A DNA stretch of 64,000 bases. It comes from Phallusia mammillata. Its lineage: Eukaryota. The stretch is from positions 19,964,001-20,028,000 of the forward strand of contig OZ281497.1 of the NCBI GenBank assembly GCA_965637545.1, in the 5' to 3' direction. The notes below the pieces were generated by a model, which saw only the letters and a list, made by a program, of their open reading frames with translations, was not told where the DNA came from and ran no database searches. This document shows positions 1 through 48,400 of this stretch, one piece after another; position 1 is the first letter of the stretch, and every line of letters starts with the position of its first letter. Position numbers and translations under genes: made by a program.

Positions 1-312
1 ACTACTAAATTTCAGGCCAGACGGTTCTAAATAACTAAACCGTCATGTCGTAATATTATATGTATCAACTAAGAGGGTCTTAACTATAGTATTATGATAT
101 TATAGTCTTTACAAACTTTACAAACTGTGAATACTGTAATAAAATCACAGTACGCCAGGCCCATTGGCGTCATACCGAATCAGCCGGTCACCAAGCATTC
201 ACCACACTATGAATACTGTAATAAAAAATCGAAATGCATGGAAAAAAACTTTTGGCTCATAAAACACATAAAATACATAAAATACAATTTTAATCAGTGT
301 AGCGGCCCAAAC

Positions 313-24400: not shown

Positions 24401-27400
24401 TATTGGAATTGCAGCAGATATAGGTATGTCGCGGTGTACATAAAAAACGCAAACTTGAAAAGCAGTTTGTTTTCTTTTTTGTGGCTGATTTTGGTAGACG
24501 TTAAAATGGCTGCAGGGTAGTGTGTGGTTGGAAATAAAATCTGAAGTCTCAACCGCACTTGACTGCACCGTATTCGCATAATGCATACATTACAGGGTGC
24601 CTAGTTTCAAAGATAACAGTCACGAAGGCGCAAGGCAGTTATTAAAACTATAGATTTGCGTAAAACTGTGCCATGTATGTAGTTTGTTCAATATACAGGC
24701 AAATAACCAAATTACGTTTAAGCATGTAATTCACATAGTTTCATGGTAGTAATTTGTATACGACCACAGATTTAGCACTGTCGGTATTTGTACAAAAAGT
24801 TGTTTTTACATCTGCTATATAACTGTGTCAGACATTATCGGGTAGCTTTGACATGCAAGCAATCAACGAAAGGTGACAGGTGTGATGGATAGTGGAAGAA
24901 CTAAAGCAGGTAGCATAACTGTGAAGTCGACAAGCGCCAATAAATATTCATGGCAAATTGATCTGCGATGTCAGATAACTCGATGGTTCGTTACATTTTG
25001 ATCAGTTCTGATATTTGGCAGGCAGTGAGTCAAGGGGAAATGTGATACTCTATGATTTTGGCCAACTGGGTCGAAAATCAGACTATTTTTACGAGCAAAT
25101 ACACCAGTAGGCTTGTTTGTGCCCCCAAGAGGGTAGTTACCGTGACAGCACGTGATTTGAGCCTAATTATTGCGCGGTGGTACAGAAAATCTATAAAGAT
25201 AAGGGCCAATTGATGTTTTGCAGCGCTGCGAGGTTAACAAGCTAATTTACTTTCCACAGATGGAACTATAGGTAACTTACTATACGCTGCATGAGATGCA
25301 CATCTGATTGGATTAAGCACAGACAGAGTTAAAGAGCAAATGTCGACCACAATTGAAGCACCTCTTCGATTGTAAGTATAATGTGGATTTTTTTTACTTC
25401 TCATTGGCAGAATTTAAAACTAATTTATAACCAACGGCACTTTGGCATTATGCATCGAAGTGTAGCAAATAATAACCCAAATTACTCTTTTTGAAATGGC
25501 AAGTAAAAGGCAGAATTCAAACAGAAGTATATCAGGCCAATACAGAATTACTTCAAACTATTGATTTTTGCGACTTCCTCAGACGGCTGTGAAATAGAAT
25601 GTTTTGACTCTGTTACGTAAGACCTAAGCTGAGATATGAATTATGCCAGCTCGTCACTAATAAGTTATTTCACTGAACAGGGCCAATCTCACCGCAAACA
25701 CCAACTCATCATCACAAGTTCAAGGATTTCATCCTGGGTTCACGACTCTCATATCATGTGGCCTGCTCGTGGTCATTCTCGTGATTTACATGTGGTTCGA
25801 GCCCAAACTCACGAAGTGCTTCGCCAAAAAGGAACGTGTACAGTTCGACCCCGAACCTTCAACACATGAAAACCGAACAGTCGATCCGAAAAACCGAATG
25901 CGATACGTTTGGACAAGTCCAAGATGCGCGGAGCCGGCTTCGGCGCACAACAAACACGAGTTATGGACGCCTGATCGGGCATTAGTACGAGAAGGCGGTG
26001 CGGTGGTAAGAGTAAACGATTACACTTCGATAGTGGAGTCCCGCCACACAACCCCGCTTGTGTTAGTGACACCACCGGTTGGAGGAAATTAGTTCTGCAA
26101 ATTCCGACAACGCAGATATACGCAACGCCTGACGTTTGAACTTTTGAACAATAACAGCTCTTGTTTTTTTATGTATTTCTGTCGCAGTGAAGCCGAGGTA
26201 TTGTGTAAATGCTCAAAATAAACGTACTTTAGAGTGTTAGGAAACTGGGGTAAAAGCATGTTAAAAACTGTGCAAAGCGTCAGGTTGTTGATTGTAACGC
26301 TTGGCTTGGCGTAAAGTGAACCGTAAACGCAATTACACGGATCACTCGCTACACGAAGCGTATTCAGGAAATCACGAGATCAAAGATCGAAAGTTTTGCT
26401 CAAGGCAAAGTTGCTTGTTCGATACGATGATTCAGAAAAACTTGTACACAGAGAAAATAATTTCAAAGATTTAGGCATACACTGCCGAAAGTAGATAGTA
26501 ATATGTATAAGTAACCAAACACTCATGAAAGTAGCAACTAACATGCAGTTTGTTCGATTAGCAGTTACAGAACACTGCCTTGACAGTTTTACAGCCGAAA
26601 AAAGGCCATAAACCGTGTTCTCTTTCCATCAAGAGTTGATTGAAAATTTTGAACTTGGAATCTAATTGTTATCAGACTCCAGTGCACTGATCCAACAAAA
26701 CGAATTCATCACCAGTCACCGATGAAACCAACAACTTGAACACAAAAAAATATTAATGCGATAGAAAATGCAATACGGGCCAGAGTCTTACACAACGACA
26801 ATATTGCTACCTTCAACTGCATTTACGGTGTTTGACTAATTCAATTAGCCACGCGCAAGTGATTCTTGTACATAATTTATTACGACAATGTGAAAACAGC
26901 AATGTAGTAAGCTTGTTAATAATTTATGAGAATTAGAGTTCACCGGAAATACAGGCATAGTTGGGCTGGTTTCAATTAAATTACAATAACAAGTGCTGCA
27001 TTTCTTTCAGGTTAGCATGTGGGGTGAGAATTTCGGGCTAATTTTTGTTTCAAACATTTTGTACAGTTAAAAGACAATGAAACAGTAGGTGTTAACAGCT
27101 GTTTTTTTACTATGAACTTTGAAACTCTATATAGAAGTCAAATTGTAAACAATTGAAGACCCATGTATTTTGCAATTATTTGTAATACAGCGACCTTATA
27201 ACAAATTAAAGCAAACAGCAAAGAAAGATACAAATCAGCAAACTTGAGATGTTACGGACGATAAGAAATAACCAGGTTAAGTAGGAGATTAAGAAAGGGC
27301 ACAAAGAGTGCGAACTGCCATTGAAGCGCTGACCAAGAATCCTAACACAAATCCAACACCCCTTGACGGTTGAGGAAACGCACCAATGAAAGCGATCGAA

Positions 27401-30400
27401 TGCCAAACACGTGACCAGAAAAATATCTGCACATAAAAACCGATGTAAGGTGTCCAAAAGAGTGAAATACATACATTAGTTTGTAAAATTTTTATTCAAT
27501 GATTTTCATACACTGGCATTTTTTGCTTTATGATTTATGGCATGGAAACCCAGGCTTGAAAAAAGCTCAAACCTTTGCACGCAATTTTATGGACAATTAC
27601 ACAATGCTTAGCCTACAGACAAATACAAACCTTAAAATGCCAAAGTGCAGTAGACGCATCAGGTCCAGTAGAAAGATACAAAAGTCCCAGCAGAACGAAG
27701 GGAACAACATTTTCCAGATCGTTTAAATGCGCGCGCCTTGCTCGCTCAACATCATCGTTTGGCCGAAGCAATTCCTTTTGTTTTTCCTTGTCGTTTGGCG
27801 CCACCACGCGGGCATCCTCGGGTGAGGATAAGGACGAAGTTTTGACGCGAAAATAGCTGGTGACCAGAGACATTGCCATTGTTTTGCATACAACGAGCGT
27901 GGCGTATCGCACAAAGCCCGCAAAAGCTTCGTTGTCAAGTGTAAAGAAAGACATACTACTGACTTAAGTGATGCTATGCAATGCTAACTCTGCAATATTA
28001 AAGCACAAAATATTGAAAAAGTAGATCTCCTTGAAAGCAGAAAATTAGAACTCGGATTCTGTCGCCTCAAAAGTGCCTTCGGCGGACAAGAGTCCAGTAT
28101 TTATAGCCTAAACCTAAGACAAGTCCACGTTAGCATGACAACGCAAAAAAATGCGTGTCAATAATTGCGCCATTCGTTGAAATTTTTGCTTCAGCCCAAT
28201 AACCTCAACAGGTTTCATCATGCACAAACTTCAAACAATTGCAAGAGTTTCACATCACGTTAAAGATAGCAGAAAATACAAGACAAACAGAACAGCTTAC
28301 CACGTCGCTTACTACACGGTTCGGCAAACAACCAATCCGCAAGGTTTTCTCGTGAAGAGAGCTTACCTATATTGACACAAATGAATCTACCGGCGCAAAA
28401 GCCGACACGGTGAATGATCTACAACGGGAGCTGTTTGGTCACGTGAAACACGCACCCACCGTGACTATGCATATTTGTGAGCTGATGCCCTCCACGCGTC
28501 AGTGATGACGAAACGAGAGCTCTTGTCATTTTGGATGACGCAACCCGATACAATTTTCGTAAAGTTGGTTGAAATGTTCGGTAATTACGCAATGTATGGA
28601 AATTCTCAAATCAAATTCACCTTTTTATTTTTAAGTGTAATCTTCTTGCAGACAATTTTGACAAGAATTAACTCCCCCACAAAAACAAGCACTTTTAAAA
28701 GACGCGCCAATTTTATTTGTCAACCAAGCATCGGCAACGAAAAGCCAGAAATGTTTACAGTAACAACAGAAGGAAGCGTAGCATCACGGTCGGCGGCGTT
28801 TGTTAAGAATTCATGTCGCTTTGACCAGATTAATACAACGCCATAAGAATGTGAAGCAGCATGGACACGTTGATACCAAAGCCGGAAGCAAAGCCGAGCA
28901 ATCGAATGGGTTGCGGCAAAGCATAGATGTACGCAATTGTGTGAATGACTCGAGCGCCAAGGAAGATCTGCAAACAACAGACAATATATTACCCAACACA
29001 AAATAACTATGAATAACTTACAAAAAACACCTTCCTACTGGATGTACATAAGTACGATTTTTAACCTTTAGTGAACTTACGACTTATATGCTTTGTGTTG
29101 CATCAAATATTTAACAGTTTAAACCAATTTCAACGAGCATTTATTAGTTTGAATGTTACGAAGTACTGACAGTGCCTTAGGTTTCGTAGTTGGCAGTCAT
29201 GTGAAAGAATATGATGCCTTTGCCTACCTGGAAATGGAAGACAGCGCCTGAAAACTCCGGACCGGTTGCAACATACAACAATGCAATCAGAACAAAAGGT
29301 AAAACGTTCTCCAAGTCGTTAAGATGGCTTCTTCGTATCTACACAAAGCAAAGTGCATTAGAGTTTGGGGTACTAAAAATTCAAACAGAATGGACAAGGA
29401 CCTGACCCACTTACTCTTTCAATGACTGCATTGGATTGAAGCATCACTTTGTGTTTTTCCTTGCTTTTCTCCATAAATACTGCATCTTCAGGAGTTGGAA
29501 TTGACTTGAGTGTAACACGATAGTACACAGTGATGATAGACATCAATACGGTTTTGGCAAGCGCCAAGGCACTATACCACACATACTCCTTAAACAACTT
29601 GTTTTCCATCGAAAGTGTCGACATCTTGGTTTTGACAGTCAAGAAGGTTGCCTATACCCACTGCAGAGATAATGCTTTTAATAGCTTGCGACAATTGACT
29701 GATTTAATTACCCGTCTGGCCCTTAGCTACGTAGTTAAACTACAATCAATTTGGTGTCAGCGTTCTCTTAACTTTTGAATGAGGGAAGACTATTGGCAAC
29801 CCGAATATATTACACTTACGTCTGTTCTGACGTTTATAACATGACACGCTTTTACTTTTTGCAAAATAATTCTGATTGCAGTTTTTTTCTACTTTTTAAA
29901 AACCACGCCAAATTCAGTACTTGAATTTCGACATTACGCACAATCTATGGCCTACTTTCATAAATTCACATCACAAATCATGGAGTCATGATTTCCATCA
30001 ACTCAATAACGCCAAAATCCTAGTCACGAATATCTAATTTCAACGCAGTTTGGACTTTGCTATGTGCAAGGCTGTTTCTGTACAAGCGTCTCACAGCACA
30101 AAGCCTCGATACCCGATACGGTCTGTCAATCTCGAGTCATTTCCCGTAGAAATCGCTGAATGTAGGCTGGAGAGGCCTTAAGCTGCGTTGTAGTGTTTAA
30201 GGCATAATGACCAAGCAGTTTTCTGATTGGTTGTAGGAAAAAAAGCTGTATTAAGTGGCTACTGCCAACTGAAGTCGGACAAGAGTTTTTATGCCGACGC
30301 ATTGAAAGTTTCATACCAAGACTAAAATGCAACAAACTGAACAATATCAGACCCTCCAACAGACAGCATGGTCATTGACCCTCACTGTTACTGTAACAGA

Positions 30401-33400
30401 ATCAGTCAATGCATTTACATGGAATAAACATATATTTCGCCTAATTGACATCTTTAATTCCTTATTCAAATAGAACAAAACTTTAGAAAAAGTATTACAC
30501 ATGCATATGTAGGAGAGTTATACTTGTATTTACACCATATACAGCATCAATTAAAACCAACAAAGTACTTGCACATTGGTCTATTTAGAGAACAGAAGTC
30601 ATAATACAAAATGCCATGTAGCAGCATACACCATAGCCAGCCATAAAAGTAATTGACCTTGCCGGTTGTGGAACAGCATTCAGATACACAATGGTGTGCA
30701 AGATACGACTCACTGAAAAGACCTGAAACAAATTTTACATTAATTCACTACTGAAAGCACAACTTGTACACATACAACACACCCGAAAAAGCAGCAATGC
30801 AGTTCCATAACTAGGGTTGGTTCCAATGTACAGAAGTGCCATTAATAGAAAAACATATATGTTTTCCATATCGTTCAGATGACATCGACGAACCTAAAGC
30901 ATATTAGGTTAATTAAATCGAGATAATTTATGAATCAATTATATGTTTGTAGGTACTAACGCAAGTTGCAGCAAATACTTCAAATAAATTGAAGTTAAGT
31001 TATAAACATGTCTTTTCGGTGAAGAGGTCAAATAAGACATAAGTTTTAGTAAGTAGTTTAACTTATCGGTGTGTGCGTAACCTAATTGTTTCAAGTCAAC
31101 TTAACATCTCAGCACAATTATGTTGCATGTAATGCTTTGGTGCAATTTCTAATGCATTTACAACAAAGTTCTCACCCTCTCCACGTTTTCATTTGCCACC
31201 AGCGCTTCTTTCCTTGATTCACGGTCCTTATTCAAAACGTCCTCCGACGACACAAACGAATTGTTGGCAAATCTTTTTGTCGTCGTATACAGTGCTAATG
31301 CCATCATCTTGACCAACACAATACACCCATGCAACATTAACGCTGCAAAAGTGTCATTTTCCAACGAGTACGGACTGCCAGCCATTCTGTATGATTATAC
31401 TCCACTTTCTGATCGACCACAATACAAAACCGCGAGGTCAAACCAAACGTACAGCGCTGGTAGGTATATCTCAGCTGAAAAAAATGCCCCAGGCTTATAA
31501 GTTACGTCACTCCGGCATGTTCCGGTAAAAAACGAGATTTGAAGCATAACGTTTTATGTCTCACGAACTAAGTCACCGACATAAGACTCGCCCCAACATT
31601 CCATTCAAACACGGGAAATTTGCCAAAAAAGAGTGTTGGCAAACAAACGAAAAGTTTTGTTTCAAAATTGTTTGTCAATAATATTTTTCTATGAAAAAGA
31701 GCATCAAAAGCCTACGACACCCGGTATTCCCAGGCGGTCACCCATCCAAGTACTGACCGGGCCCGACGTTGCTTAACTTCCCAGATCGGACGAGATGGGG
31801 TGTTCTCAACGTGGTATGGTCGTAGGCGATTGCTCGCGCGCAATGATGCTTTTTGTAGGGCAAACAATCTTATCTAGTCTCACACAATTTGATCACCGAA
31901 AATTCGTTTATTTGCGGAAAAACAAACGTCGATGCATGACCATTTTAGAACTGAAATTATATACATTTTTGAATATAATCCTAACTTCTACGTTGCAATT
32001 AAGCATAGACTGGTCCCGAAATGTTTTATTGTAAAAGGGATCTCAGAATCGAAAATGCCATGTAACCACACACTCCAAATCCGGCCATGAAACACAGACC
32101 TCTTGCCGGTTGTGGAACTGCATTAACGTACACTATGGTGTGCAAGATACGACTCACAGTGAAGATCTGAAACATAATTGTTGTTAAACAGTAACGATAG
32201 TTTATTGTTTATTTCAAATAGCAACACAAGTTCAATGCGAAATAGTCCATTATAGTCAAACAGCTACTGTATAATGTCTTGAAGAACATGTTGCAAGTAG
32301 AAATCTTACTGAGTTTGAGTTAAACATTCACTTAAACCACACGGTAAACTCTTATCTGTGGTTAAGTTTACCAGCAGCCAAGCAACGCACCCGGAAAAGA
32401 AGCAATGCAGTTTCATAGGCAGGGTTGGTTCCAATGTACAGAAGTGACATTAACACAAAAAGATAAACGTTTTCCATATCATTCAGGTGACATCGCCGTA
32501 CCTAAAACAAATAAGACTTATCGAATCGAGATCATAACTGTTAAGTCACTGCAAACCACACCATTTTAAACCAAAAAGTAACCCTTGGGAGAGTGTTTTT
32601 GTAGAATAAGGTAGAATATTATCTTTAGTGTGATCTAGCAACTAACTAAGCAAATCGGTGAAATGCTAATCAGACATTATAATTTAGAAGTTTTTGTCAA
32701 ATTACCTTTAACCCAAACAAACCGTTCATGCTACGTTTTTGCTGTAACTTATACTTTACATTAACATCTTACCCTTTCCACATTCTCATTTGGCACGAGT
32801 GCTCGTTTTCGTACTTCAGGATCGGAAGAAATGCCTGCAACATCCTCTGACGACAAAAACGTTTTGCTCCCTATTCTTTTTACAGTCGTTAATAAGACCA
32901 CTGCCATCATCTTGACCAATACAATGCACCCGTACAGCAAAAATGCCGAGAAAGTGTCATTTTCTAACGAGTAAGGACTACCTGCCATCTTGTACGCTTG
33001 CTTTCACGTTCTGAATGAGTATTCGACGAAACCGCTTAGTTAAACCGAACGTTTGCTACTTGGTTACTTATTAACACCAGCTGAAAGCTCGGCTTGAGTA
33101 TGACTAGGTGTTTTGCCGGCGTGTTCCGGTTCAAATAGTGTAGCCTACAGCGGGCGAAACCTCACAAAGGAACCGTGAAGCACAACATAGGCTACACCTG
33201 ACTCATCCACGCGAGACGCCATTCCATGTGAGGAAAATTCACGGAAAAAAGAAGCGGCAGAACAGAACAGGTCGTACCTTTCACGCTACCTGTTTAGACA
33301 ACTTCCCATTATCCATGTACCTTTGTTTAGAATTCCACCAATTGTGTTGTAAAGACGATGGGCATGGATTGGGCCACTGGAGCAAAATGTCCAGCTCGCC

Positions 33401-36400
33401 CTCGATTTGAACGCGAAATGTACAGTTTGTTTAAATGTGCGCATTACCACGTCAGAATTCGGTTGCAGGTAGAGTTATTCAAATGCCAATTGACTGAAAC
33501 CGATTCACTGGTTCAAAAGGTCAAACAGTGGTGTTTAATAATGCAAATACCACTTTCAAAACTTTTGTGGAAATGCTTTGCTGGGTCTGAGCTTGTAAAT
33601 CAGTCAAGGTAAACAAAAAACAACGGTTCTGTTTCCAAAAGTAAAAGCCTACGACACCCGGTATTCCCAGGCGGTCACCCATCCAAGTACTGACCGGGCC
33701 CGACGTTGCTTAACTTCCCAGATCGGACGAGATGGGGTGTTCTCAACGTGGTATGGTCGTAGGCAACTGCTCGCGCGCAATTACGCTTTATATGGGGCGA
33801 GATTTACCAACGGCACTACTAATATAATGAAAAAACAGAAACAGTGCTTTCACAAACGAATTTAGACTGGAGTAGTTTTATTTGTTGAACGAATAAACAA
33901 TTATGTGTTCCCATTGATTGAATTGTAATCTTGTGCAACTTTAATGAAGACAAGTAATGTTCTAATGTTGCAATTGGACGCAATTTCACGACATTTTCGT
34001 TCAAAGTAGAGTTTTGAAAATTGAAAATGCCATGTAGCCGCACACCCCGAAACCGGCAATAAAGCACAGACCCCTTGCTGGTTGTGGAACTGCATTAACA
34101 TAGACTACGGTGTGCAAAATACGGCTCACAGTGAAGATCTGAAAAAAACACATATATTTATTGCACTTTTTCACCGCACAAAAGACAAGTGCATTTTATA
34201 CCACATTACATACCCTGAAAAGCAGCAATGCAGTCGCATAGGTAGGGTTTGTACCGATGTACAGGATTGACATAAGCACGAAAAGGTAAACGTTCTCCAT
34301 ATCGTTACGGTGACATCGGCGCACCTAAGAAGCGTTGAAAACATAGAGTTAGAAATAAAAACCAATAAATACCTCTCAGAGCCTTAACCTACCCTCTCAA
34401 CATTCTCATTAGGCACCAAAGCGCGTTTCCGTTTCTCAGGGTCTTTTACATCTTCTGATGAGATAACTGCCTTGTTCTCTTTTAATTGTTGTTAAAGGAA
34501 CGACTACCATCATCTTGACCAACACAATGCAACAATACAGCAGGAACGCTTTGAAGGTGTCATTTTCTAGCGAGTACGGACTGCCTTCCATCTTGCCTGC
34601 TGAGTTTGCTTTGCCTAAACTTAATGTAAATGTGCAGAAACTACCCAACGCTACGCTTAGTACACTAGCTCGACATTTAGTCACTGATTAATATCCATCG
34701 CAACTAGTAGGTGGAAGGTTGTTTCTCACAGACAGTTTTCACTGATCTAGCTTTTTCTGCGCTCGAGGTTACCAAATCAGAACACAGTACAATGGCACAG
34801 TAAACTGAAATCAGCCCATACATAAACAGATCTGTGCAAAAAATAATGCACGCTATTTTATCTACGACTGTTTTAAATCCATGGACAACCTAGTCTCTAT
34901 TAGATATCTGTTATAAGTTGTTAGGTAGCCTACAAACTTAGATACATACATACCAACTACAGGTAAAGCAGGACTTACCCGTTCGACGTTCTCGTTGGGC
35001 AAAAATGCCTTTCTGCGTTCCTCAGGGTCTGGGCCAATACGATACAAATCCTCTTTGGAACTGACCGACTTGTTTTTAAAACGCTTTATAGTAGTGAGTG
35101 TTGTCATCAACATGGTCTTGACCAGTAATATGGCACCGTAGAGCAGAAAGGCGGCAAAAGTTTCGTTTTCTAAACTATAAGGTTTCATGGCGCTTGTCCT
35201 ACTTGCAACTAACTGAACACGCTATTAATGTGAGAATGTTTTGGGTTCCTCACTTACACATGTTCAATCGTCCAAAGGGCATTTTTTTCGTGTGCAAATA
35301 TTGACATTTACGCTGCCTTGCTGGGTGAAAACGCCATTCTTACATCATTTTTAAGCAGCTCCAAGCACGTGACAGGAACATAAAATACGTTCACAAGATC
35401 CAAAAACTTGTCCAACAAAATAGACCGTGAGGCAGTTTGAAAAAAAGCAAAAGCCTACGACACCCGGTATTCCCAGGCGGTCACCCATCCAAGTACTGAC
35501 CGGGCCCGACGTTGCTTAACTTCCCAGATCGGACGAGATGGGGTGTTCTCAACGTGGTATGGTCGTAGGCGATTGCTCGCGCGTAATGACGCTTCTTATA
35601 GGGACGTAACAACGAGATATTGCATTTTAGGTTTCATACCCCTTTTGAATACTCTGTAGTCTGTACAAGTGCTACTGCCCACAATTAAAAAGGACAACAG
35701 AATGCGAAAGCAGGCCTAAAACATCTGCTTGAAACACCAAGCAGTCTTTTTAGTCAATATGTAAATGTAGACATAAAAGTGATCAATATTCTTTTGTTTC
35801 AATGCCTTTTGACAAAAGGTCAATGAGCCAATTTCACAAACGAACCAAACTCAGGACAAACAATTCAGACTAGGTTCTTTTGGTCACGACAACACAAAGT
35901 ATGGGTATCAAAGTAAAAATATTGGACCTGATCATAAAGACACTCACCACACTTTGTTTTCTTGCTTCACAAGCTTCAGAATAATCCCAGCTATGGACGT
36001 CATCAGTGGGTAATGCTGAACGCTGCTTAGTCCTGCAAGACATTAACCTCAGATAGTAAAATAGTTCAGTAACCTCCCACTGTTATTAATGTGGCAATGG
36101 CGTTCAATTTCTCATCAAATCTTAGCCTTGGTTACATTCACTTGATCCAGAGGTTTAAAATCAGGGAAAAGTATCTCAAAAACAGTAACTTTGACCCACC
36201 TTAAGTCCAAAATAGTTATACAGTTATACATTGTGACACTGAAAACAAGGCCTACAACATAGAACGTATATCTGTAGACTTTGTTTTTCAATAGTTTTTT
36301 TATGTTTTTTTATGAAAAGAAATGCATAGCGATGAATTTTATCGTCGAGGAGGGGTAAACCGAAACTAAAAAAGGTTAAAAGTTTTTATTACTGGTCAAC

Positions 36401-39400
36401 ATTACCTGGTTGCTTTCCAGAAACCACTTTGTCAAATAAGCTTCCTTTGTTTGTGACTCGGCTCAAAATTTGGTTCACGCACTGCGAAAGGAAAAATCAA
36501 GATATGATTACTTTATTTCCACTAGAATGTGTCCGAGTCGTCAGGTGCATTTTACGTGCATTACTGACATCTTTTAAACACTAAAAAAATCAGTGACATA
36601 AATCGCAGTTCAGTTTATAAGGTACACGTGTGATTTTCCTTTTGTCAAACGCATTTAGTTTTTTTCAGGATGGTGCTTTTCATCAGGCCTCTCTTATATC
36701 TGTCCTACATTATAACCCAATAGTAAAACAAGAATCTCTGGTGTTACGTATATGCAGTGCAGTTCTACAAAACTCATAACTGATGAAATATGGCAGGTGG
36801 AAGTATCCTGTTTAAGTTCAAGCCCCAACACACCCATTAACGATTATAGCAGCGGTTCTCAAACTGGGGTTCGCGGTCCTTTATGCCGTCGAGGGGTCCG
36901 TGAGGCAATTTTGGGGGGACTTCGAAAAGGCTGAAGTACTTATATAATCTTATTTGGCGTCAGTTTATGCCACTTGATCGGTTCAAATCAAAGTAAAATT
37001 GACAATAGACTGTCTCCATTGCCAAACAAAAGCATTTATTGCGTGACAATGACAATTCACAAAAAGGCAGTTGTTCTCGCACAATCGTAATGTGTTCGTC
37101 TTGTCTGTGATGTCACAGCCAGTCTATGGAGCATTGTTATGCGATTTTTTGCATAACTAGCTAAAATCCTGCAATTAACTTCCGTTTTTTTCTGAAATAC
37201 ACATTTAGGCGTAAGGACCGCGAGCCGTCGAAATAATGACAAAGGGACCGTTTTGAAAAAGATCTGAAAAAGTTGAGAACCACTGGATTATAGCAACGCC
37301 ATATTGAACAATTAAATCACCTGAATTAGACTTGTTGAAAGAATCTCTGAGTCGCCGTTGTTGGTCCAGTCCATGAAGACGTCAGGAGCAACAGCTAGAG
37401 TTAGTTCGAGTACTCGCAAGAGGGAAACAGAGAGCTCGAACAACATGTCAACAATGCGGAGTTGACGTAAGGCCTGTGCATCGAGTGAGGCCAACAATCC
37501 AGTCGCCCCTTTCCATCCACGCAAGTTTTGCTGGTGGACCTAATGCAAACAAAGTGGAAACTTAGAGTAGGTCATACGTTCTCAACCAGGGTATTTTTAA
37601 CACGCCTTGTTGACTATAACACCTTGGCAATTAGCACCTCCAACTTTGACAGGTTCTACAAAAAAGCATCTTTGTACATAAATCCGTAGGTTAAAAGTCA
37701 GTTAAAGTCGTTGATTGCGTTTGCTTGCGCCTCATACACCCATATAGCGCAAATGAACTTTTTTAGTCGGGTTCGGGCTTAACTTTGAATAAAATTGACT
37801 TGATTCCATCCGGACTTTACACTGGGCCAAATTTGCGTCGTGTTTTTGCATAGTAAATCTTAATCGCCGAATATTTTATGTAAAACTCCTGGTTTTGCTG
37901 TTTTCTGGTTAGTACTTTCAGGTCCCAACTTCAAACCCGCTTACAACTCTGTGAAATGTTATAACACCTGACAGTCAACGCAACAAAGCAATAAAGTAGA
38001 GGGTTTATCCGCATAGAGTTTGCACATATATTTTTCGAATAGAAGCAATAACAAAATATTTAGCAAAACATGTAATAAATGTCCTGATTGTAATGGAATA
38101 AAGGATTAGACTAAACAAGTGAAAAGCAAAAGCCTACGACACCCGGTATTCCCAGGCGGTCACCCATCCAAGTACTGACCGGGCCCGACGTTGCTTAACT
38201 TCCCAGATCGGACGAGATGGGGTGTTCTCAACGTGGTATGGTCGTAGGCAATTGCTCGCGTGCAATAACCTGTCTTATAGTGACGTTACAAACGCCTAGC
38301 AGCCCATAATAAAACTACATTCGTTTCGGTGGAATATTTTTGTCCATTTTTAACCCTTATGAGGTCAAATTAAGCTCTGTACAGTTACTACACACATTAA
38401 AACCTTTTTAGCCATACTTAGTGTGGTTTTAGCCATACGAAGCAAAATTTTAAAACGGAATATCTATTCTTTACATGCCACGTAGAAGAGGGCCGTATAG
38501 TTGTGTATGTAGTTTACAAAGTTGTTGTACCTCTTGTAATTGACCGATGAACTCGGAGAAACTCCAATGTAAATGTTCCAGTATACTGTGCACGAATTTC
38601 CCAGCTAAAGTTGGTTCAGTCATGAGAAGTTCACGAACACAGTCGAGCAGTTTGCGTGGCACGTATGGGTCTGTACAATGCAAAAGTATGTTTTAAGGCA
38701 ATGTTCCCTTACAAAATCCGTTTAATTGATTTGTGTATGTCAGGGGTGGCCAACCGGTCAAAGCCTAAGAGCCATATTTTTTATTGTGTTACCACAAAGA
38801 GCCACATTATACGCATAAGCAGATATGTTCAATGCCTTGTCCCTTCCTCACACACAGAGACATGTGCTTAGCCAGATCTATTCTAAATGTCGCCAACATA
38901 ATAACATAATAACGACACAATTTGACTTGTACAGACCACGGGCCAGTCATTTTCAACTATAAATGGTCAGTGCAAACACCGTCTCTCACACAAAACCCTC
39001 ATTTCAACGAATCCATCAAACAAAAACATATAAATTTAAATCCCCCTTTTTTTCTCATTCTATAAATAACGTGCGGTGAGATTCATTTCTGGTGAATTGC
39101 TAAAATCTTTTTTCACTGCCAATTTGAAGGCTAACTTGACAAAAATTGTTTATTTAAAAGATTTTCCCTGCTGAAAAAACTCTTGGTATTTTCATCTAAC
39201 GCGCATTGTGCGCCAAGTGCAAAGTGGCGAAACTAATTCATTGCGACGTCATTAATGCATTCACCACCAACAATCGTTCAATTCAAACCCAAGACAAACT
39301 GCCGATAAAATATAACGTTCGTCATAACCCGAAAAACAACGGATTGAAGCATTATTTACTTTGGAACACATTTGTTGCAAATATTGCTGTTGCTTTGTGT

Positions 39401-42400
39401 CTCATTCGCATTGTACGCAACAATGAGCAATCATTCATTGTTCACAATTGAATATATGCCATCATAATCAAGCCATTTGCCACATACAGTTGCAGTTTTA
39501 AGGCAAGGTTTGTGGCCATACCAATAATAAGTGTGTTCAAAAGCAAAATTGTTGAAGCTTTACTTTAAATTTAACGATTTTTATACCAGATCGCCACATG
39601 CTAACCCAAATATACACAATGGCCCCAAACTTCGACAACAACTTAAGAGCCGCATAAAACCAGGCGAAGAGCCGCATGCGGCTCGCGAGCCGCGGGTTGG
39701 CCACCCCTGGTGTATGTCATATAACGGTAGTATCTCTACAGTCCGACACATTACCAGTGATTGATGTCAGTGTTAAAATGATTGCAATTTACTACGAACA
39801 CAGTGTAGTGTTGTAAAGTATTGTAAAAATTGAGCAGAGCAAGTTTTGGCAACATATTTTTTCTCGTGCGTTTGAGAACATTGGTCTCTAAATATTCAGG
39901 CCAAAAAATATTTATTTATATTGGTTCATGTTTGTAAATCGACAAAAAATGATTCGTTCACCATGTTCTCTGTTGAGGAGCTTTTTCACTTTGGCGACGT
40001 ATGGTGGATGATCATAACGCATTGCAAATCCACTTCCCTGGAACAACAAAAAGTTTAAACATTTTCCCTTACTTAACAAATTTATCACCCGCTTTTTCAC
40101 GTGAAGCGCCATACTCCCATTAAGAAGTAACCATTTAAATGCAAAAAAGGTTCAATATGCCAAAAATGTTTTGCTTACCCGCCATAGCGTTGCTAAGATA
40201 CGATGACCGACACTAGTCCATGGTTTGTCCTCGTCATAAGCGTACAACATGTTACGTACAAATGCTCTGAGGCTGCGAACAAAACCATGTTGTTACATAT
40301 GTAGCAAAGACCCACAAATATTTAGGACTTTTTATTTCAATGTTGGACATAGAATTAGATGCAAGGTGTAAATTACACTCTTAAAGTGCTTCAGCCCTTT
40401 TCAGATATATTACAACAGAAGTACTTACTCTTCCATGGGCATAGTTTCGACAGCTTTTAACTGTAGAGGATAGGTGATGAAAGTAGTAATGGTATTGGCT
40501 AGCATTGTCTTCATGTCTACAACAGTAATGTAAATTGCTTTAAAACTGCAACGAAAAAAAAACATCCTGGAAGTTCTAAGTTAAAGTTTTGTATGTACGT
40601 TATCTGAGAGAATCTAAATCGAAGTGTTTCTCACCGTTGTTAACAACGCGCGAATCGCAGTGAAAAGTGCTGAGGAATCGGATAAACGAGCGCAAGGTGG
40701 CGTCGTGCTGTGGAAGTTTCTCGAAGGGCTGGGACGGGGCAAAATATTCGCGAAGACATTTGTACAATCTAAAAATTGAGTTTAAAATTTATTCATAAAC
40801 TTTGCTAAAATCCAATTTACACAAGCTTTTGTTGAATTACCTTGTGCCAGCTGTCAGATAAAATTCAGGCATAAAAGTGAAAAGTGCACCCTTCTCCGCA
40901 GCTTTGTGGGCGGTTCGTATGCAAAGTTGAAGCAGCCACCACAAGTTGCGTTGTGACTCCTGTAAAGAAGGAGAAACATGTTTTGCCAAGAAATAACGAG
41001 TGGAAAAGGTCCAGTCACTTTCCAAGAAAACTGCAAAAGCCTACGACACCCGGTATTCCCAGGCGGTCACCCATCCAAGTACTGACCGGGCCCGACGTTG
41101 CTTAACTTCCCAGATCGGACGAGATGGGGTGTTCTCAACGTGGTATGGTCGTAGGCGATTGCTCGCGCGCGAAAACGCTTCTTATAGTTACAAACAGTGC
41201 AAAACCTCTTCATTTATTAAATTGCCCATTTTTTTCTTTCTAAAACGCACATACCCTTAAAATCGTATTTTTTTGTGTGGGTAATGCTTACCGGGTCATA
41301 AACTGATGCTTTTAACCAGGCGATGGCACGACAGAGTTCAGTCATGTGACGCAGCAAGACGCCATGTGATTGGGTAAGGCTGTCACGGATGTCTGTCAAC
41401 TGCGTCGAAAATACTTGATTTTAGAAACATCGCCATTTTGTCACAAACAAGCGGTTTTTATACTCACATTCGGTGCAGTGCATTTCTTCAGTTTAATTTC
41501 GATCTCGTTAAGAGCGGTGGCATATTCCACAATCTTGGTACGAGTTGTGTGAATCTGAAGACAAAAAATAAAAGAAGGCTTTTCATATCAGGGTACAGGA
41601 AGCAATAGCTAAAAAGTGTATTTTTAAAAATGACACAGTATACAAGTGGGGCATATGTCTGCTTTGACTAGAAAGGTGGCTTTTCTTTGCATTGCCCATT
41701 TTAAATTTTGATTTTATAAGCGTACAAAAAAATTTCATTTTGATTTTAAAAGTGTACAAAAATTTACAATGGGTAAAAAGACTAAAGCTTAAGAGTTAAA
41801 AAAAAACACTATTTACAACAGCAGGGAACAGGGGAAAAAGCTTAAACGTGTATTTTTACAAGTACTGCAAATGTCTGCTTAAAATACAGCGTCAGTCATA
41901 ACAACCCGGTGTACTGTGACGTAATAAGAATGGCGGGATGTTACGTAACAGGATGTTCGAATGGACGTTATAAAGTTTGTGTACAACGCAACGTTTGCAT
42001 TAGTTTAAATTGTCAGCACGTCATTTAACCAAAACAAAATAACAAGCGATTTTAGGTACACTTTCATAGTATTTCTAACTGGTAAAACCTTTGATATTTT
42101 GAAACTAAAGTTAGTTTGCAAGGTGCAATATTTTCAGCAAAATTAAAATCACTAGTTCTGATTTTCATTAATTGTTCACCAAAAGATAAAAGTTGTTCCA
42201 CCTTATCCATGTGTTGATGCATAACGTTGCTGTAGAGGAGCAGACAGCCATCAGTTAATTCGATCAGGTGAGCTTTGGTTGGTGATTTTTCCAGATCCCC
42301 GTCTTCACTGGATGATCTCTTCCGACTAACAGTGATACTGCGATCCCGCCCAGTCATCTTATTGCTCTGGTTCAGCAAAGCACGCGCAAGTCGCAGAACA

Positions 42401-45400
42401 GGGTTGAACGTATCAAGGTCCGCATCTGTAGAAAGTGGATGTTGTATAAGAAGATCAGTATAGAACAAGTTAAGATATAATTGTATTTAAAGGTATAGGT
42501 TTTATTTGACTTAAAACTTTCTAACTTTACTTTAAGTTTAGGGCAACGACCGTGTGATAGAAACTTCTAATGAATTTATCCCAAATGCTGATATAGTAAC
42601 AACAACTAAGACAACACAAGGAGCGCTTATGCTTCTAGAAAACACCATCAACAATTCTACAGACCATATTTAACGCCGCGAATGAACAAGATTCATGTCA
42701 TGTCAACAAAGTATGCTAAGTTTACATCGCTTTGCTGTTTTACCACAACGGTGTAACAAGAAAACAAGCACATGGTACTGCTCTATATACCAGCGACATT
42801 ATACGAAAACACTTAGACGATGTTGTAGAGTTCAACACAATCACAACTGACCATCGTCTGCTCTGGTGAGAGTGGACAGCGATGGACCGGCCGCTTCATC
42901 TTCAAACAGCTGCAAGATGGCACTGTGTTCGTTCCAGGGACTGTCCTCATTGGTGGGTCGTCTACCCCCTCTACCCCTCGCTACTGATACACCTTCCTTC
43001 GCCAGTTCGTCTGAACAAAATACGTTTGTGCGATATTAACAACAGTAGGATATGGCATTACACTTAAACCAGTCATTCTTAGCTGGGCGTAAGTACAAAA
43101 ACAGGATGTATGAGATACAGTAAGAATACCAAATAACCAACGGCGGTTTAAGCTTTTATATAGAAAGTTTTAGTAAGGAATATTTCTTTGCTGGAATTAA
43201 ATATTTCTGTCTGTTATTGTAGATATGCATTGGAAAGTTTATTTACACTTTACACCCAATTAAGATTGTAGGTCTAATTTTACTTCATTCATGCGAGAGC
43301 CTTCTTGAATATAAAGCTAAGTGTTGAATTTGGGTTACAAAAAAACGGCAATATGCTTGTGGCAAAGTAAAGACCGTTGTGGGACTCGAACCTTCGACCT
43401 TACGAGTGGCCGAGATAAAAACCATTTATTACACACATGAGTAGCAAACCAAGGCACGCTACACTAATACACAGAAACAACTCTGACTTCTTAATCTAAT
43501 TCTAATGGCACACATTGGTCATAACAGCATAATCGCCGACATAACAGGCGTCTCATAAAACCCAGTGGGGTCGTGATCCCTGATAAACATGTCATAATCA
43601 TCTATAGCAGCCTCTGTATCTAACTGTAAGTCTATCTCTCGGGAACACTATTCGACTTATACGTAAGTTTGTGGCAACGAAAATGGCAATTGAAGGGTTG
43701 TGACCTGACTTGATACACAGCAGAAGACGAAGTACAATGCTACAGACGTCAATACACATGGCAGTTAAGGTCTTTGATTCCGTCGTTGCACACGAGTGCT
43801 GACGTTTAAAGCCAATTATATAGCAATATGAGTAAGAGTGGTTTCACACAATGCTGCCGTAGCTGTTGACAGATACGAGTTTAAGCCAAAGATTTCCCAT
43901 TTGGATTGCGACTAAGTGTGTATTAAATAGATTGAACAGTTTTGTATTTTGCTGTAAACACGTATTTAGGGCATTGGTAGGCATTGGTAAGCAACAAATC
44001 AGTAATATTTCCCCGAAACAAACTAAAAAGATAAAGCGAAACCCTTAACATGGCCGCAAAGTCAATACTGGTGTTGTCCAACTTATTGCATCATAAGATG
44101 TGACCAAAAAAAAACACTTCTATGCCGCAATGATGCAATATCTTGACCCCTTGACCCCTAAAGTGATTGAATTTCATCACAGATTACACCAACCTTTATG
44201 TTCGTTCAATAGGTGTGATTTCAGACCACCGACCCGCTGCAGATCGAAATAATCGATTGAATCCGTGTAGAAAGATTCCGTGGGAACGTAACCGTCTGCA
44301 ACAATTATGTAAAATCAATTAAATAAAAGATAAGACAGTAAACATGATTTCATTAAAACAGTGGCAGAAACCCAGTATATAGAGTAGTGTGCGTGTGACT
44401 TTACAAGCATAAAACGTCAATTAGATTCGGGTAAATATAACAGTGACACAAATCAATCTACGCATTAAGTGTCGTCATATAAAATGAGTAAAAAAATACA
44501 GTACAGAACGTTTCTTTACACGAAAATTCATGTAAAAAGAGCATCAAAAGCCTACGACACCCGGTATTCCCAGGCGGTCACCCATCCAAGTACTGACCGG
44601 GCCCGACGTTGCTTAACTTCCCAGATCGGACGAGATGGGGTGTTCTCAACGTGGTATGGTCGTAGGCGATTGCTCGCGCGTAACAATCCTTCTTATAGTT
44701 ACCAAACCATGCAGACTTCAATTTTTACTTTTCAACAATAGTTTGTATTTCGCTTGATGTCTTTCGTTCATTGTAGCAACTGTTTCTTTCACTAAGCAAC
44801 TTTTGCATTTACAGTTGGGCGAACGTAAAGGTATTTTTAGGCGGAAGAATTGAACATAATTTATAGTTTACCTGCAGCTTTCACATAGCCAGGTTTGGTG
44901 GTGGCCGATTTATCCCACAAGTCACGAACAACATCAACAAGACGCTGCATGAAAGAGTGAAGAACTATCGGTGGAGTGACCACGGTGTGTTCCGACTGCA
45001 AGAGAAAACGACAGACAATCAGTGACTTAATACGTTGGTTGCATTAGATTAGAAAATGGTATCCAAAGTTGACATTTTAAGCAAAATAGCTTTAATTGGA
45101 CTAAATTAATCATTTTTTTTGCTTTTTATACTTGTGTAATGTGTTTTTATAAGATCCAACCCATCATCTAGATTTTCATACTTTTACATTGAGAGCTGCA
45201 GATCATATTGTTCTCATACAATTAAACAGCAAAACGTACCCGATGTACAGACACGACGTTTTCCAAGTATTTGCGAAAATATTTCACAAACGCTCCGCTC
45301 ACCATTCCCTGTGATTAATACAAAATATATCAAATTCCTGCTGAAATTAAACATTGTTTTTTTTTCGTGAGCCAGGTCGTTTAAGTGACCAAGAAATACA

Positions 45401-48400
45401 ATCACTGCTACAAAACTCGGGTAAGTTCTGATTCCAATTTGGACCACCTTGTAAATACTGGATTAATATAACCTAGATTAACATGTTACTGTAGCAAACT
45501 TTGTTCTTACCGGGACTTGTCCATCTAAGACCATAAGCCGCATGATTTCGCGTTGAAGCTTTTTCACGGCTGCAAATAAGACACAGAATGAAATTATAGT
45601 AAATGTTGTATTGTTTACAAATCGACAAGGTTAGTTTATCGGGCCAATATGATAGTAAGGTATAAGCTAAGTAGCTGCATTATATGAAGCATAATGTAAT
45701 TCACAGTTATCTACTGAAGTTGTGTACTTGAATAAAAGGCAAATTACAACACCAAGTTAAAATTTTGCACAGATTTGAGGGACTTATTTTGGACAAATAA
45801 TAAAATGACCGGTGATTATCAGAAAAAGCCTGTTTTGGAGAAAGTGGAAAACACTTACTGTCCATTTTTTCTTTCAGCTTCTCATAGCCGCGTTCGTAGG
45901 TCGCTTTGGGGTCGCAATCCTATAAAACACGTGTAAACATTTGTTTATACACAACCGAACACTATTCTACTGGGTCAGTACTAAGGCCAATAAAGTTCAA
46001 CCAGTTTTTCTAATTTTCTTCTTTACACTTTGAAAATCCCAATATAACTGAAATGGCGGAACATTCAACTCACGTTCGGTCGAGGTTGTTACGTTTGCAA
46101 AAATACCTATTTTAAAGAAGGTTCAGTGCGCACACCATGAAACTTACCCTTCCCCACACCATTGGAATAAGTTTACTCAACCCTGCTTCTCTGTGCTTCG
46201 ACACTTGTTTGATGTGAAACAAGGACGGAATCTCCGAATGACGGTCGAATGTGCGAATTTTGAGTTAAGAAACAAAGGCGTTTTAAATACTTTAAAAACA
46301 AATAATAACAAAAAGTTAAAACACCTCAATAAAATCAAAGGGACAAATCCATGCTGAAAAATAAGATCAAAATTTTGTGAAATAAGTTTCGAAAGAAAAT
46401 TGCCACGCTTTACAGTTCCAAAGTTAAGCGTTGGTTTAATCTTAAGACTGTTAATTAATCGTAAAAAACAATCGTTAGTTACAGCGCTTATTATTATCTT
46501 TTACATTGCAAAAAATGGCACCAACCGTTTTGCGAGGCATTGTAACTCAGCTTTTTTACTTGACATTGATTGTAACATTTTGAAACATAAAGGATATGAG
46601 CAATGTAATGCGAGGTTGCGTCTGGTCTGTTTGTGCTTGAACAATCCCAACATGAAGGACAAATTACGAGTCTGATCGTGAAAGTCGACATGCACGGGTG
46701 ATGAACGGTATCTCCTCAATACACAGCCGAACACCAGGTTGATGCAGTCACGTGCTTCGCGACCCTGCTTGACAACAGGAACGAAATTTAAAACTTGCCT
46801 TGATTCAGCGGTTTTACCGTTTCATAATTGTTATCCTTTAGAGAGGAATTTGATTATAATCTATTCACCCCCGTTTACAAAAAAACTAACCCATCCAAAA
46901 AGGTGGCGTCATGAAACGTGATACCTCAATTACCCCCTAAAAATGTCAATATACCCCTTTTGGGGGTATTTACCCACAAGGTGACCACCTCACCTCAGCT
47001 TTTTAAACCATAACCATATTTACTTTCCTTTTCCTTGGCCACATTCCACGTTTTTTTTATTTCTATTCAGGGGTACTACTGCCAAACACTAATTAAACGA
47101 CTCATTTTAGACCAGCGGTTCCCAACCTGTGGGCCGCGACCTCAACTGGGGTGGCCTGACAATTTACCTGGGGTCACCTAAGGCAGTGTTTCCCAACCTA
47201 CGGGTCGCGACCCAAAGTTGGGTCGCCTGAACATTCTGTTGGGTCGCTTGTTTTAGTGACAATAAGAACATCTACTTTTTGATTTCGCCTTGTAGCGTTA
47301 TTTTATATATTTCCCAAGGCTTTAAATTGTTGCCCAACAATAATTTCATCACAACTTGTCGTGATAATGGTTAAAATGTTTATGACGTCATAAAGTAATG
47401 TGTTAGCTCACAGTTAAGCGTTGTCTGGCTAATAATTCTTCGATTCAGCTCTAAGTCCTGGTTAAATGGAAATGTTTGGTCGAAAACAACAACACTATTT
47501 GTTCGTTATAAGGTTATTGATTTGCTAAACTTGCGTAGTAATTTTTAAAAAGCTTTCCGAATTTACAGACAAAAATTCAACTAAAATAACATGTCCATGG
47601 GTCGCGAGAAACCACTAAACAAAATTTTGGTAAGTATTTAGGTCGCGTCTAAAAAAGGTTGGGAACCACTGACCTAAGGCATGGTTCCCAACTTGTTTAG
47701 GCCAAGGACCACTAGCCCCTATAAAATAAACTAATAGACCATCTTGCTGTTGAGAAAAAATACAGTCAATTTAAGTTCAGAGACTACTAATTTTATCCTT
47801 GGGGTCACTGCAGCTTGACAAATGTCATCAAGGGGTCACGGCACCACAAAGGTTGGAAACCGCTGTTTTAGACTAAAGATGGGCTTACTTTTGATTTTTC
47901 GCAAGGGTTCAAACTTACACGATTCTGTACGAATGTTAAACGGCCGGCTCTATTAGGCAAGCGCTTGCCACAATTTTCTTACAACGACACTTACATCTGC
48001 ATATTGCCACAAGCAGCCAAGAATCGTATGAAGATCGTAGTAGGGGTCAGCACTGCTCGCAAAATCACACAAAGAGTAGAGGAACGGGAGAAGATGCGAC
48101 TCGACGTTATAAGGAGTTTTCTGCAGAAAGGGTTAGAAAAGTTTAAGTCCAAGTACAGTGAATTACAAAGATCAAGTTAGTAAAATGTCTCTTACCATCA
48201 ATGGACCGAGCAGTTGCACGATATGAGCAAGAATCACTTGACGACTGACGTTATCCAACTGACGGTCCAGCTCCTGAAGAAGCAAATCTTTTTGTTAGTT
48301 TTGTTTCAGCCTTAGACTTTGGCAAAACACATTTTAATATACTAGGCCTGCCACGCGAGGTAGTTTTTCGTGGCACACCAAATGGTTTTTTTTAATTTGT

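What the first reader, a model, noticed from the sequence alone, without database searches (positions are those of the whole stretch)
31708..44667. Six identical solo 5S rRNA genes dispersed through RNF123 introns
The copies are not a tandem array. They are spaced 1.8-3.5 kb apart, separated by unrelated exons, all sense to the host, all full length with oligo-T terminators and identical in sequence, while their flanks diverge within ~15-40 nt. This implies strong selection or gene conversion acting on isolated copies, and an intron-hosted 5S locus with Pol II/Pol III co-occupancy.
Basis: partly seen in the sequence, partly recalled or inferred. Interest (0 to 1): 0.75.

Follow-up and report, generated by a model that had tools for sequence, protein, structure and literature searches.

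The report
Six 5S genes inside RNF123 introns
Six sequence-identical, complete 5S ribosomal RNA genes, each with its own small promoter and terminator, sit in four introns of one sea-squirt ubiquitin-ligase gene (RNF123), an arrangement missing from four related tunicate loci and unusual but not unprecedented for 5S genes.

Summary
Six full-length 5S rRNA genes (RF00001, 115.9 bits each) lie on the minus strand at 31709-44667. Their 119-nt bodies are 100% identical. Each has a conserved upstream block of about 32-45 nt (a TATA-like box and a near-palindromic proximal element) and a double T-run terminator. The flanks are otherwise unrelated.

A collinear exon map against the annotated Ciona RNF123 locus places all six in RNF123 introns, in sense orientation. 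Copies 6, 5 and 4 lie in introns of 576, 332 and 991 nt. Copies 3, 2 and 1 lie in a 12,557-nt intron that also hosts five nested MAPEG/MGST genes. Copies 1 and 2 were duplicated together with MAPEG units, because their spacers keep residual homology.

The host architecture is shared with Ciona and other relatives. None of four relatives' loci carries a 5S gene at the orthologous sites they cover, so the cluster is most simply lineage-specific.

There are no poly-A tails, target-site duplications or truncations, so these are not retrocopies. The promoters differ by 13.5% from their consensus while the bodies show 0 differences in 714 nt. Promoter and trailer variants are mosaic among copies. 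Together this points to purifying selection plus gene conversion.

Expression and a genome-wide census could not be tested. This is a new variant of the known dispersed-5S organisation, of moderate interest.

The parts
44533..44699 (-). 5S unit c6: promoter (-32..-1), 119-nt 5S gene 44549-44667, double T-run. It lies in RNF123 intron a/b, 204 nt from the donor and 253 nt from the acceptor.
41022..41188 (-). 5S unit c5: 5S gene 41038-41156. It lies in the 332-nt RNF123 intron f/g, 135 nt from the donor and 78 nt from the acceptor.
38115..38281 (-). 5S unit c4: 5S gene 38131-38249. It lies in the 991-nt RNF123 intron l/m.
35436..35602 (-). 5S unit c3: 5S gene 35452-35570. It is 377 nt into the 12,557-nt intron o/p and 264 nt upstream of the ATG of MAPEG M5.
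33630..33796 (-). 5S unit c2: 5S gene 33646-33764. It lies between MAPEG M5 (239 nt after its stop) and M4 (658 nt before its ATG).
31693..31859 (-). 5S unit c1: 5S gene 31709-31827. It lies between MAPEG M4 (201 nt after its stop) and M3 (324 nt before its ATG).
44296..44871 (-). RNF123 intron a/b (576 nt, GT..AG), host of c6.
40960..41291 (-). RNF123 intron f/g (332 nt, GT..AG), host of c5.
37540..38530 (-). RNF123 intron l/m (991 nt, GT..AG), host of c4. It is flanked by TPR_RNF123 exons.
23391..35947 (-). RNF123 intron o/p (12,557 nt). It hosts c3, c2 and c1, five nested same-strand MAPEG genes, and an antisense small gene noted earlier by the scan.
27295..35188 (-). Tandem cluster of five MAPEG/MGST1-like genes. 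M5 has exons 34976-35188, 34211-34321 and 34004-34144. M4 has 32770-32988, 32388-32498 and 32029-32172. M3 has 31173-31385, 30780-30890 and 30588-30728. M2 spans about 28833-29642 and M1 about 27295-27954.
21509..53224 (-). Host gene RNF123 as far as mapped here. It runs from the SPRY exons (50048-53224), through the TPR_RNF123 exons (37315-38671), to a RING-like last exon (21509-21625).

Best explanation
These are six autonomous RNA polymerase III genes for 5S rRNA, most likely functional. They form a loose, lineage-specific cluster embedded in sense orientation in four introns of the Pol II gene RNF123 of an ascidian. Each unit is about 170-180 bp. It has a TATA-like box near -30, a near-palindromic proximal element (ATTGC-GCGCGA-GCAAT) abutting the start site, a canonical 5S body whose internal-promoter region fits the family consensus, and a T4 terminator followed by a back-up T-run. 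The following steps are inferred. A promoter-plus-gene unit entered the locus at the DNA level after the split from the sampled relatives. It was copied with tandem MAPEG-gene duplications (copies 1 and 2, probably 3), and was separately seeded into three short introns (copies 4-6). Since then the bodies have been kept identical by purifying selection together with short-tract gene conversion among the copies, while everything outside the unit has drifted to saturation.
For: All six copies are full-length 115.9-bit RF00001 matches with a canonical fold, and the bodies are identical. The upstream block is conserved in all six, and each has a double terminator. Intron placement is shown by the collinear 19-exon map to annotated Ciona RNF123, by GT..AG sites, and by a relative's cDNA that joins exons o and p. 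The spacers on both sides of c1 and c2 retain residual homology (z = 6.4 and 7.1, 0/300 shuffles; a shared AATAAA 3'UTR end and a shared promoter palindrome), so these copies co-duplicated with MAPEG units. The MAPEG paralogues show only 0.51-0.78 third-codon identity. The 5S promoters differ by 13.5% from consensus (22.7% pairwise), against 0/714 differences in the bodies. The variant pattern is mosaic: c1 and c6, the outermost copies, share a 15-nt trailer, whereas c6's promoter is closest to c3's. There is no poly-A, no target-site duplication and no truncation. No 5S is present at the orthologous sites covered in Ciona, two ENA contigs and the closest relative, by local blastn and by Rfam on 84.1 kb.
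Against: There is no expression or Pol III occupancy evidence. No genome-wide census was possible, so a large tandem array elsewhere could be the real supplier of 5S rRNA. Selection and conversion cannot be separated with six copies. Orthologous introns are too diverged to define insertion boundaries, so gain versus repeated loss rests on parsimony. Perfect identity could in principle be inflated by assembly polishing.
Confidence: 0.7

Rival explanations
1. The six copies are transcriptionally silent or marginal orphons. The organism's 5S rRNA comes from a conventional tandem array elsewhere, which may not be assembled. The intronic copies stay identical only because they are repeatedly converted from that array.
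For: Tandem arrays are the norm in animals, and a review describes dispersed 5S genes as occurring only very occasionally (PMC10946416). No expression data were obtainable. rDNA arrays are often missing from assemblies.
Against: The upstream promoter block and the double terminators are conserved in every copy although the neighbouring sequence is saturated. That is expected for used genes, not for passive conversion targets. Published counts in ascidian assemblies are low (7-35 loci; PMC5006418, PMC6562748). The scan's notes on 710 windows of this genome report no other 5S gene locus, though this is weak evidence.
Confidence: 0.13
2. The copies are recent mobile or retroposed 5S-derived elements (SINE-like or retro-pseudogenes). 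On this view they are identical simply because they are young, and the flanks differ because the insertion sites differ.
For: The flanks of copies 4-6 share nothing with one another. Another window of this genome carries a noted tRNA-5S-like chimeric element (s1-411010; unverified).
Against: All copies carry sequence upstream of the transcription start, which a Pol III retrocopy would lack. There is no A-tail, no target-site duplication, no truncation and no LINE-like tail. The promoters have diverged 22.7% pairwise. Copies 1 and 2 sit inside an old MAPEG duplication with 51-78% third-codon identity. The copies are therefore not young.
Confidence: 0.05
3. The perfect identity of the bodies is an assembly or polishing artefact, in which reads were cross-mapped among the 119-nt repeats.
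For: Repeats shorter than the read length can be homogenised by short-read polishing. I could not lay independent reads.
Against: Copy-specific differences begin immediately at -1/-3 and at +124, so the copies were resolved individually. Five DNA-like runs from at least three studies hold 59-69% of the words of the 35400-41399 stretch.
Confidence: 0.05
4. The 5S RNAs are released from the RNF123 pre-mRNA introns in the manner of intronic snoRNAs, which would explain why all six are sense to the host.
For: All six copies (6/6) are sense to the host. Three of them sit in short introns of 332-991 nt.
Against: Each copy keeps its own TATA-like and proximal promoter and a Pol III terminator exactly at the 5S 3' end. 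Copies 1-3 lie between nested genes, downstream of MAPEG poly-A signals. The shared orientation is also explained by local duplication.
Confidence: 0.03

Closest known systems
Dispersed 5S RNA genes of Neurospora crassa (Selker et al. 1981, Cell 24:819, cited in PMC5555474) and other fungi and protists (Drouin and de Sa 1995, cited in PMC10946416)
   Same: Both have solo 5S genes whose flanks are unrelated apart from a short conserved upstream block with a TATA-like box near -30. The genes are kept alike although they are not in a tandem array. The detail of the Neurospora promoter is from my own knowledge.
   Different: Here the genes are in an animal. They are confined, as far as seen, to 13 kb, all in one orientation, and all inside introns of one Pol II gene. 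Three of them are interleaved with a tandem protein-gene family.
Tunicate 5S organisation: Oikopleura dioica 5S-SL RNA gene pairs (PMC8008620); Ciona 5S sites (PMC6562748 Fig. S3; PMC5006418)
   Same: Both show low-copy 5S genes that are not in a long array. [quoted passage not shown] Ciona has 35 annotated sites on four chromosomes, or 7-10 loci in an older count.
   Different: There is no SL RNA gene partner here. The only SL-like 16-mer (30461-30476) lacks a GT donor and an Sm site. An intronic location and linkage to MAPEG genes were not reported in those papers. The orthologous Ciona locus has no 5S.
5S genes linked to other multigene families (histone, SL RNA, snRNA repeats; reviewed in PMC10946416)
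   Same: Copies 1-3 alternate with members of a tandemly duplicated gene family and were duplicated with them.
   Different: The partner is a small, diverged protein-coding MAPEG family of three to five genes, not a homogeneous high-copy repeat. The spacers are saturated rather than homogenised.
Pol III genes (tRNA genes, SINE-type units) inside Pol II introns
   Same: Both are independent Pol III units inside introns of an expressed Pol II gene. This comparison rests on general knowledge.
   Different: Here several 5S rRNA genes, possibly a large share of the genome's complement, are concentrated in one host gene. One of them fills more than half of a 332-nt intron.

Membership tests
5S rRNA gene (Rfam RF00001) | Full-length match to the covariance model above the gathering score | tested here: met
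   Six matches at 115.9 bits against a gathering score of 38, covering model positions 1-120, E = 7e-25.
5S rRNA gene (Rfam RF00001) | Three-way-junction secondary structure | tested here: met
   The cmscan structure line shows all helices paired. The MFE fold is -50.8 kcal/mol with a closing helix and two arms.
Functional Pol III type-1 gene | Terminator of at least four T directly after the gene | tested here: met
   All six copies end in TTTT, and each has a second T-run within about 15 nt.
Functional Pol III type-1 gene | Internal control region (boxes A, IE, C) intact | tested here: inconclusive
   The region aligned to model positions about 45-100 follows the Rfam consensus closely. The boxes themselves were not scored, and TFIIIA binding is untested.
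Functional Pol III type-1 gene | Transcribed and occupied by Pol III / TFIIIA | not testable with these tools
The runs are stored as contigs only.
Tandem 5S rDNA array | Head-to-tail repeats with a homogeneous spacer | tested here: not met
   Only a 170-nt unit is shared. The spacers of 1.8-3.5 kb hold unrelated exons and genes.
5S retro-pseudogene or 5S-derived SINE | No upstream promoter carried along; A-rich tail; target-site duplication; truncation or a LINE-derived tail | tested here: not met
   The conserved upstream block is present in all six. There is no A-tail, and the longest word shared between the two flanks is 8 nt or less.
Dispersed (Neurospora-type) 5S genes | Solo genes with unrelated flanks and a short conserved upstream element | tested here: met
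Dispersed (Neurospora-type) 5S genes | Copies scattered genome-wide | not testable with these tools
   Only this window is readable. The scan's notes give no other 5S gene locus.
Intronic snoRNA-like (host-processed) RNA | No promoter or terminator of its own | tested here: not met
   Each copy has its own TATA-like box, proximal element and T-run terminators.

The most novel reading that the evidence does not exclude
This 13-kb stretch is the principal 5S rRNA locus of the species. It was born in this lineage when a minimal promoter-gene-terminator unit of about 180 bp was seeded at the DNA level into pre-existing introns of an expressed Pol II gene, with no transposon hallmarks. It then spread partly by riding on MAPEG gene duplications, and it is kept uniform by gene conversion within the locus. 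The uniform sense orientation is selected because it keeps Pol II and Pol III moving in the same direction.
Probability: 0.2. Interest if true: 0.65.

Novelty: new variant of a known kind. Interest (0 to 1): 0.45.

Why it matters
In animals, 5S genes are usually studied as long tandem arrays, where concerted evolution is attributed to unequal crossing-over. Here there are six resolvable copies with unique flanks, datable in part by the protein genes duplicated with them, and they are still identical. That allows selection and short-tract gene conversion to be measured copy by copy. Unique flanks also allow Pol III occupancy to be assigned to individual 5S genes, which is impossible in arrays. 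The locus is also a natural test bed for Pol II / Pol III traffic on one template, with one 5S unit occupying more than half of a 332-nt intron. The comparison with relatives shows that the host architecture (RNF123 with nested MAPEG genes) is old while the 5S genes are not seen in the relatives. That bears on how Pol III genes colonise new sites without transposon machinery.

Tried and rejected
The 5S body was used only inside local scripts, against loci already fetched. Rfam was run on relatives' loci only after local blastn had shown they contain no 5S.

2. Depth-based copy counting was impossible, because all 24 runs are stored as contigs.

3. A scan of JGI metagenome contigs with the upstream promoter motif alone (TATAAGAAG-N8-CGCGCGAGCAAT, wholly outside the 5S body) gave 0 hits. 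Looser motifs would drown in chance matches, so the second scan was not used.

4. Aligning the orthologous introns of four relatives around copies 4 and 5, to define insertion boundaries, gave no significant similarity.

5. I looked for 5S relics beside MAPEG M1 and M2 and found none at E<=1.

6. I tested for an SL RNA gene partner, as in Oikopleura. The one 15/16 SL-like site lacks a donor and an Sm motif.

7. The big representative search returned no same-species RNF123. Its closest full-length hit (P0018) was a metatranscriptome cDNA.

8. L002, an ENA contig with a weak MAPEG fragment, turned out not to be the orthologous locus.

9. RNF123 was searched exon by exon, by reference only.
Full report
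OBSERVATION

An Rfam scan of the whole window finds exactly six 5S rRNA genes (RF00001). All are on the minus strand, full length and score 115.9 bits. They lie at 31709-31827, 33646-33764, 35452-35570, 38131-38249, 41038-41156 and 44549-44667. A permissive scan (E<=1) of 20000-56000 adds nothing, so there are no decayed copies nearby.

The six 119-nt bodies are identical. Repeat finding returns one six-copy family of 170 nt with spacings of 1937, 1806, 2679, 2907 and 3511 nt. The predicted fold is the canonical three-arm 5S structure.

ANATOMY OF THE UNIT

- Upstream: conservation runs to about -32, and more weakly to -45. It comprises a TATA-like box (consensus CTATAAGAAG, about -31 to -22) and a proximal element, ATTGCGCGCGAGCAAT, that abuts the start site and is a near-palindrome.
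- Downstream: every copy ends in TTTT and has a second T-run within about 15 nt.
- Beyond these limits the flanks of copies 4-6 share nothing with any other copy. The flanks of copies 1-3 share only MAPEG exons.
- There is no A-tail, no target-site duplication (the longest word shared between the two flanks is 8 nt or less) and no truncation.

HOST GENES

Minus-strand ORFs between copies 1-3 are MAPEG/MGST1-like exons (PF01124). From 37.3 kb upward they are TPR_RNF123 exons (PF25576), and further up there is a SPRY exon.

The nearest MAPEG relatives are Ciona savignyi and C. intestinalis MGST1-like proteins at 60-63% identity, so the window is from a non-Ciona ascidian. An earlier scan note also calls it a sea squirt.

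The C. intestinalis locus (L001) is annotated with a 1321-aa RNF123 (SPRY, TPR_RNF123, RING). That gene spans three same-strand nested MAPEG genes and one antisense small gene.

Exon-by-exon local tblastn of window ORFs against L001 gives a strictly collinear map of 19 RNF123 exons, with the MAPEG cluster at the same position in both genomes. An intron-less metatranscriptome cDNA of a relative (L003) has the exon matching 36033-35947 abutting the exon matching 23386-23219. This confirms that 35947-23391 is one intron.

All splice sites are canonical:

| Intron | Coordinates | Length | 5S copies |
|---|---|---|---|
| a/b | 44871-44296 | 576 nt | copy 6 |
| f/g | 41291-40960 | 332 nt | copy 5 (135 nt from the donor, 78 nt from the acceptor) |
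| l/m | 38530-37540 | 991 nt | copy 4 |
| o/p | 35947-23391 | 12,557 nt | copies 3, 2, 1 |

Exons were handled one at a time, by reference.

COPIES 1-3 AND THE MAPEG CLUSTER

Five MAPEG genes (M1-M5) lie in tandem, all on the minus strand.

- Copy 3 is 264 nt upstream of the M5 ATG.
- Copy 2 is 239 nt after the M5 stop and 658 nt before the M4 ATG.
- Copy 1 is 201 nt after the M4 stop and 324 nt before the M3 ATG.

The spacers on both sides of copies 1 and 2 keep weak but significant homology. The M5 and M4 3'UTRs align up to a shared AATAAA (z = 6.4). The M4 and M3 promoter-proximal regions share an ACCGGAACAYGCCGG palindrome (z = 7.1). Both gave 0/300 shuffles. Copies 1 and 2 therefore arose by tandem duplication of a MAPEG-plus-5S unit. 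Copy 3's flanks show no such homology.

The duplication is old. Third-codon identity among M3, M4 and M5 is only 0.51-0.78.

WHY THE IDENTITY IS NOT TRIVIAL

In the promoter (-32..-1) the six copies carry 26 differences in 192 positions. That is 13.5% from consensus and 22.7% mean pairwise divergence. The bodies carry 0 differences in 714 positions. The copies are therefore not young, and the bodies are being held constant.

The variant pattern is mosaic. Copies 1 and 6, the two outermost and 12.8 kb apart, share an identical 15-nt trailer (19/26 matches against 7-15 for other pairs). Copy 6's promoter is closest to copy 3's (34/45), and copy 1's spacers are homologous to copy 2's. This is what short-tract gene conversion among copies would produce. 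With six copies it is suggestive, not proof, and purifying selection surely contributes.

RELATIVES

Five further genomic loci of RNF123 relatives were fetched through exon-sized proteins.

- L004, L006 and L007 (with the short L008) come from JGI samples and represent the closest relative, at 70-94% exon identity. L004 ends just upstream of the copy-6 intron and covers none of the six sites.
- L005 and L009 come from ENA assemblies.

All are collinear with the window's exons. L005 and L009 also carry MAPEG genes after exon o.

- L001 and L009 cover all six orthologous sites.
- L005 covers exon b through the MAPEG genes.
- L006 and L007 cover introns f/g and l/m.

None contains a 5S gene, by local blastn or by Rfam on 84.1 kb. 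The nested architecture is therefore shared among these tunicates, while the 5S genes are most simply a gain in the window's lineage. Orthologous introns are too diverged to align, so the insertion boundaries, and a strict distinction between gain and loss, cannot be established.

CONTEXT IN THE LITERATURE

- A 2024 review states that 5S genes are usually in arrays, are less often linked to other multigene families, and only very occasionally are dispersed (PMC10946416).
- Tunicates appear to be at the low-copy, dispersed end. Oikopleura has 27 copies across its chromosomal scaffolds, mostly paired with the SL RNA gene (PMC8008620). Ciona has 35 annotated sites on four chromosomes (PMC6562748).
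- An older survey gives 7-10 loci in Ciona and Botryllus assemblies and about 24 in Didemnum (PMC5006418).
- My paper searches found no report of a 5S cluster inside the introns of one protein-coding gene or interleaved with MAPEG genes. The library is incomplete, so this does not show that no such report exists.

WHAT COULD NOT BE DONE

All the runs are stored as contigs. There is therefore no evidence on expression, on polymorphism, or on genome-wide copy number.

From that point no letters of the 5S body were sent to any search tool. The body was compared only inside local scripts with loci already held. The one collection scan used the upstream promoter motif alone and found nothing.

The scan's own notes list no other 5S gene locus in 710 annotated windows of this genome. 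They list only an unverified tRNA-5S-like chimeric element.

VERDICT

Three refinements apply:

- Three of the copies share one large intron with a nested MAPEG cluster.
- Two of those copies were duplicated together with MAPEG units.
- The cluster is absent from four relatives' loci.

The best explanation is a lineage-specific loose cluster of autonomous, probably functional Pol III 5S genes, kept uniform by selection plus gene conversion. This is a new variant of the known dispersed-5S organisation. It is of moderate interest, mainly as a tractable system for copy-resolved concerted evolution and for Pol II / Pol III interplay.

Noticed in passing
window 30461-30476 (minus strand): GTTCTATTTGAATAAG is a 15/16 match to the Ciona spliced leader (PMC7986045). 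It lies about 110 nt downstream of the MAPEG M3 stop. It is followed by GAATTAAAGATG, with no GT donor and no AGCTTTGG Sm motif, so it is not an SL RNA gene. It may be a retro-copied 5' end of a trans-spliced mRNA, or a chance match.
   Followed up: partly
window 34439-34687 (minus strand): A decayed duplicate of MAPEG exon 1 (MEGSPYSLENDTF..., losing similarity after about 45 residues) lies between exon 1 and exon 2 of M5. It is either a relic of a further duplication or an alternative first exon.
   Followed up: no
window 33005-33135 and 31403-31531 (minus strand): The regions upstream of the M4 and M3 start codons share an ACCGGAACAYGCCGG palindrome and several other blocks, although the surrounding spacer is saturated. 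These are candidate MAPEG promoter elements.
   Followed up: partly
window 56490-61920 (minus strand): A dystroglycan-like gene (Pfam a_DG1_N2, E = 4.8e-17; a mucin-like Pro/Thr-rich stretch; a C-terminal PPPAY motif) lies directly upstream of RNF123. From memory, DAG1 and RNF123 are also neighbours on human 3p21.31, which would suggest old microsynteny.
   Followed up: partly
L001 (Ciona intestinalis AP043571.1:3094761-3115448); L005; L009: The nesting of a same-strand MAPEG gene cluster in the RNF123 intron after exon o is shared by Ciona and two further relatives. Ciona also has an antisense small gene in that intron. The MAPEG copy number differs: 3 in Ciona, of which two are near-identical, against 5 here. 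This implies independent duplications in each lineage.
   Followed up: partly
window 297-17642 (minus strand): A large gene with N-terminal ankyrin repeats (Pfam Ank_2, Ank), followed by Ser/Asp-rich and long Glu/Lys/Arg-rich coiled-coil-like exons, lies downstream of RNF123.
   Followed up: no
window 31829-31844, 33766-33781, 35572-35587, 38251-38266, 41158-41173, 44669-44684: The proximal 5S promoter element (consensus ATTGCGCGCGAGCAAT) is a near-palindrome. It therefore scores on both strands in three copies, which suggests a dimeric binding factor.
   Followed up: partly
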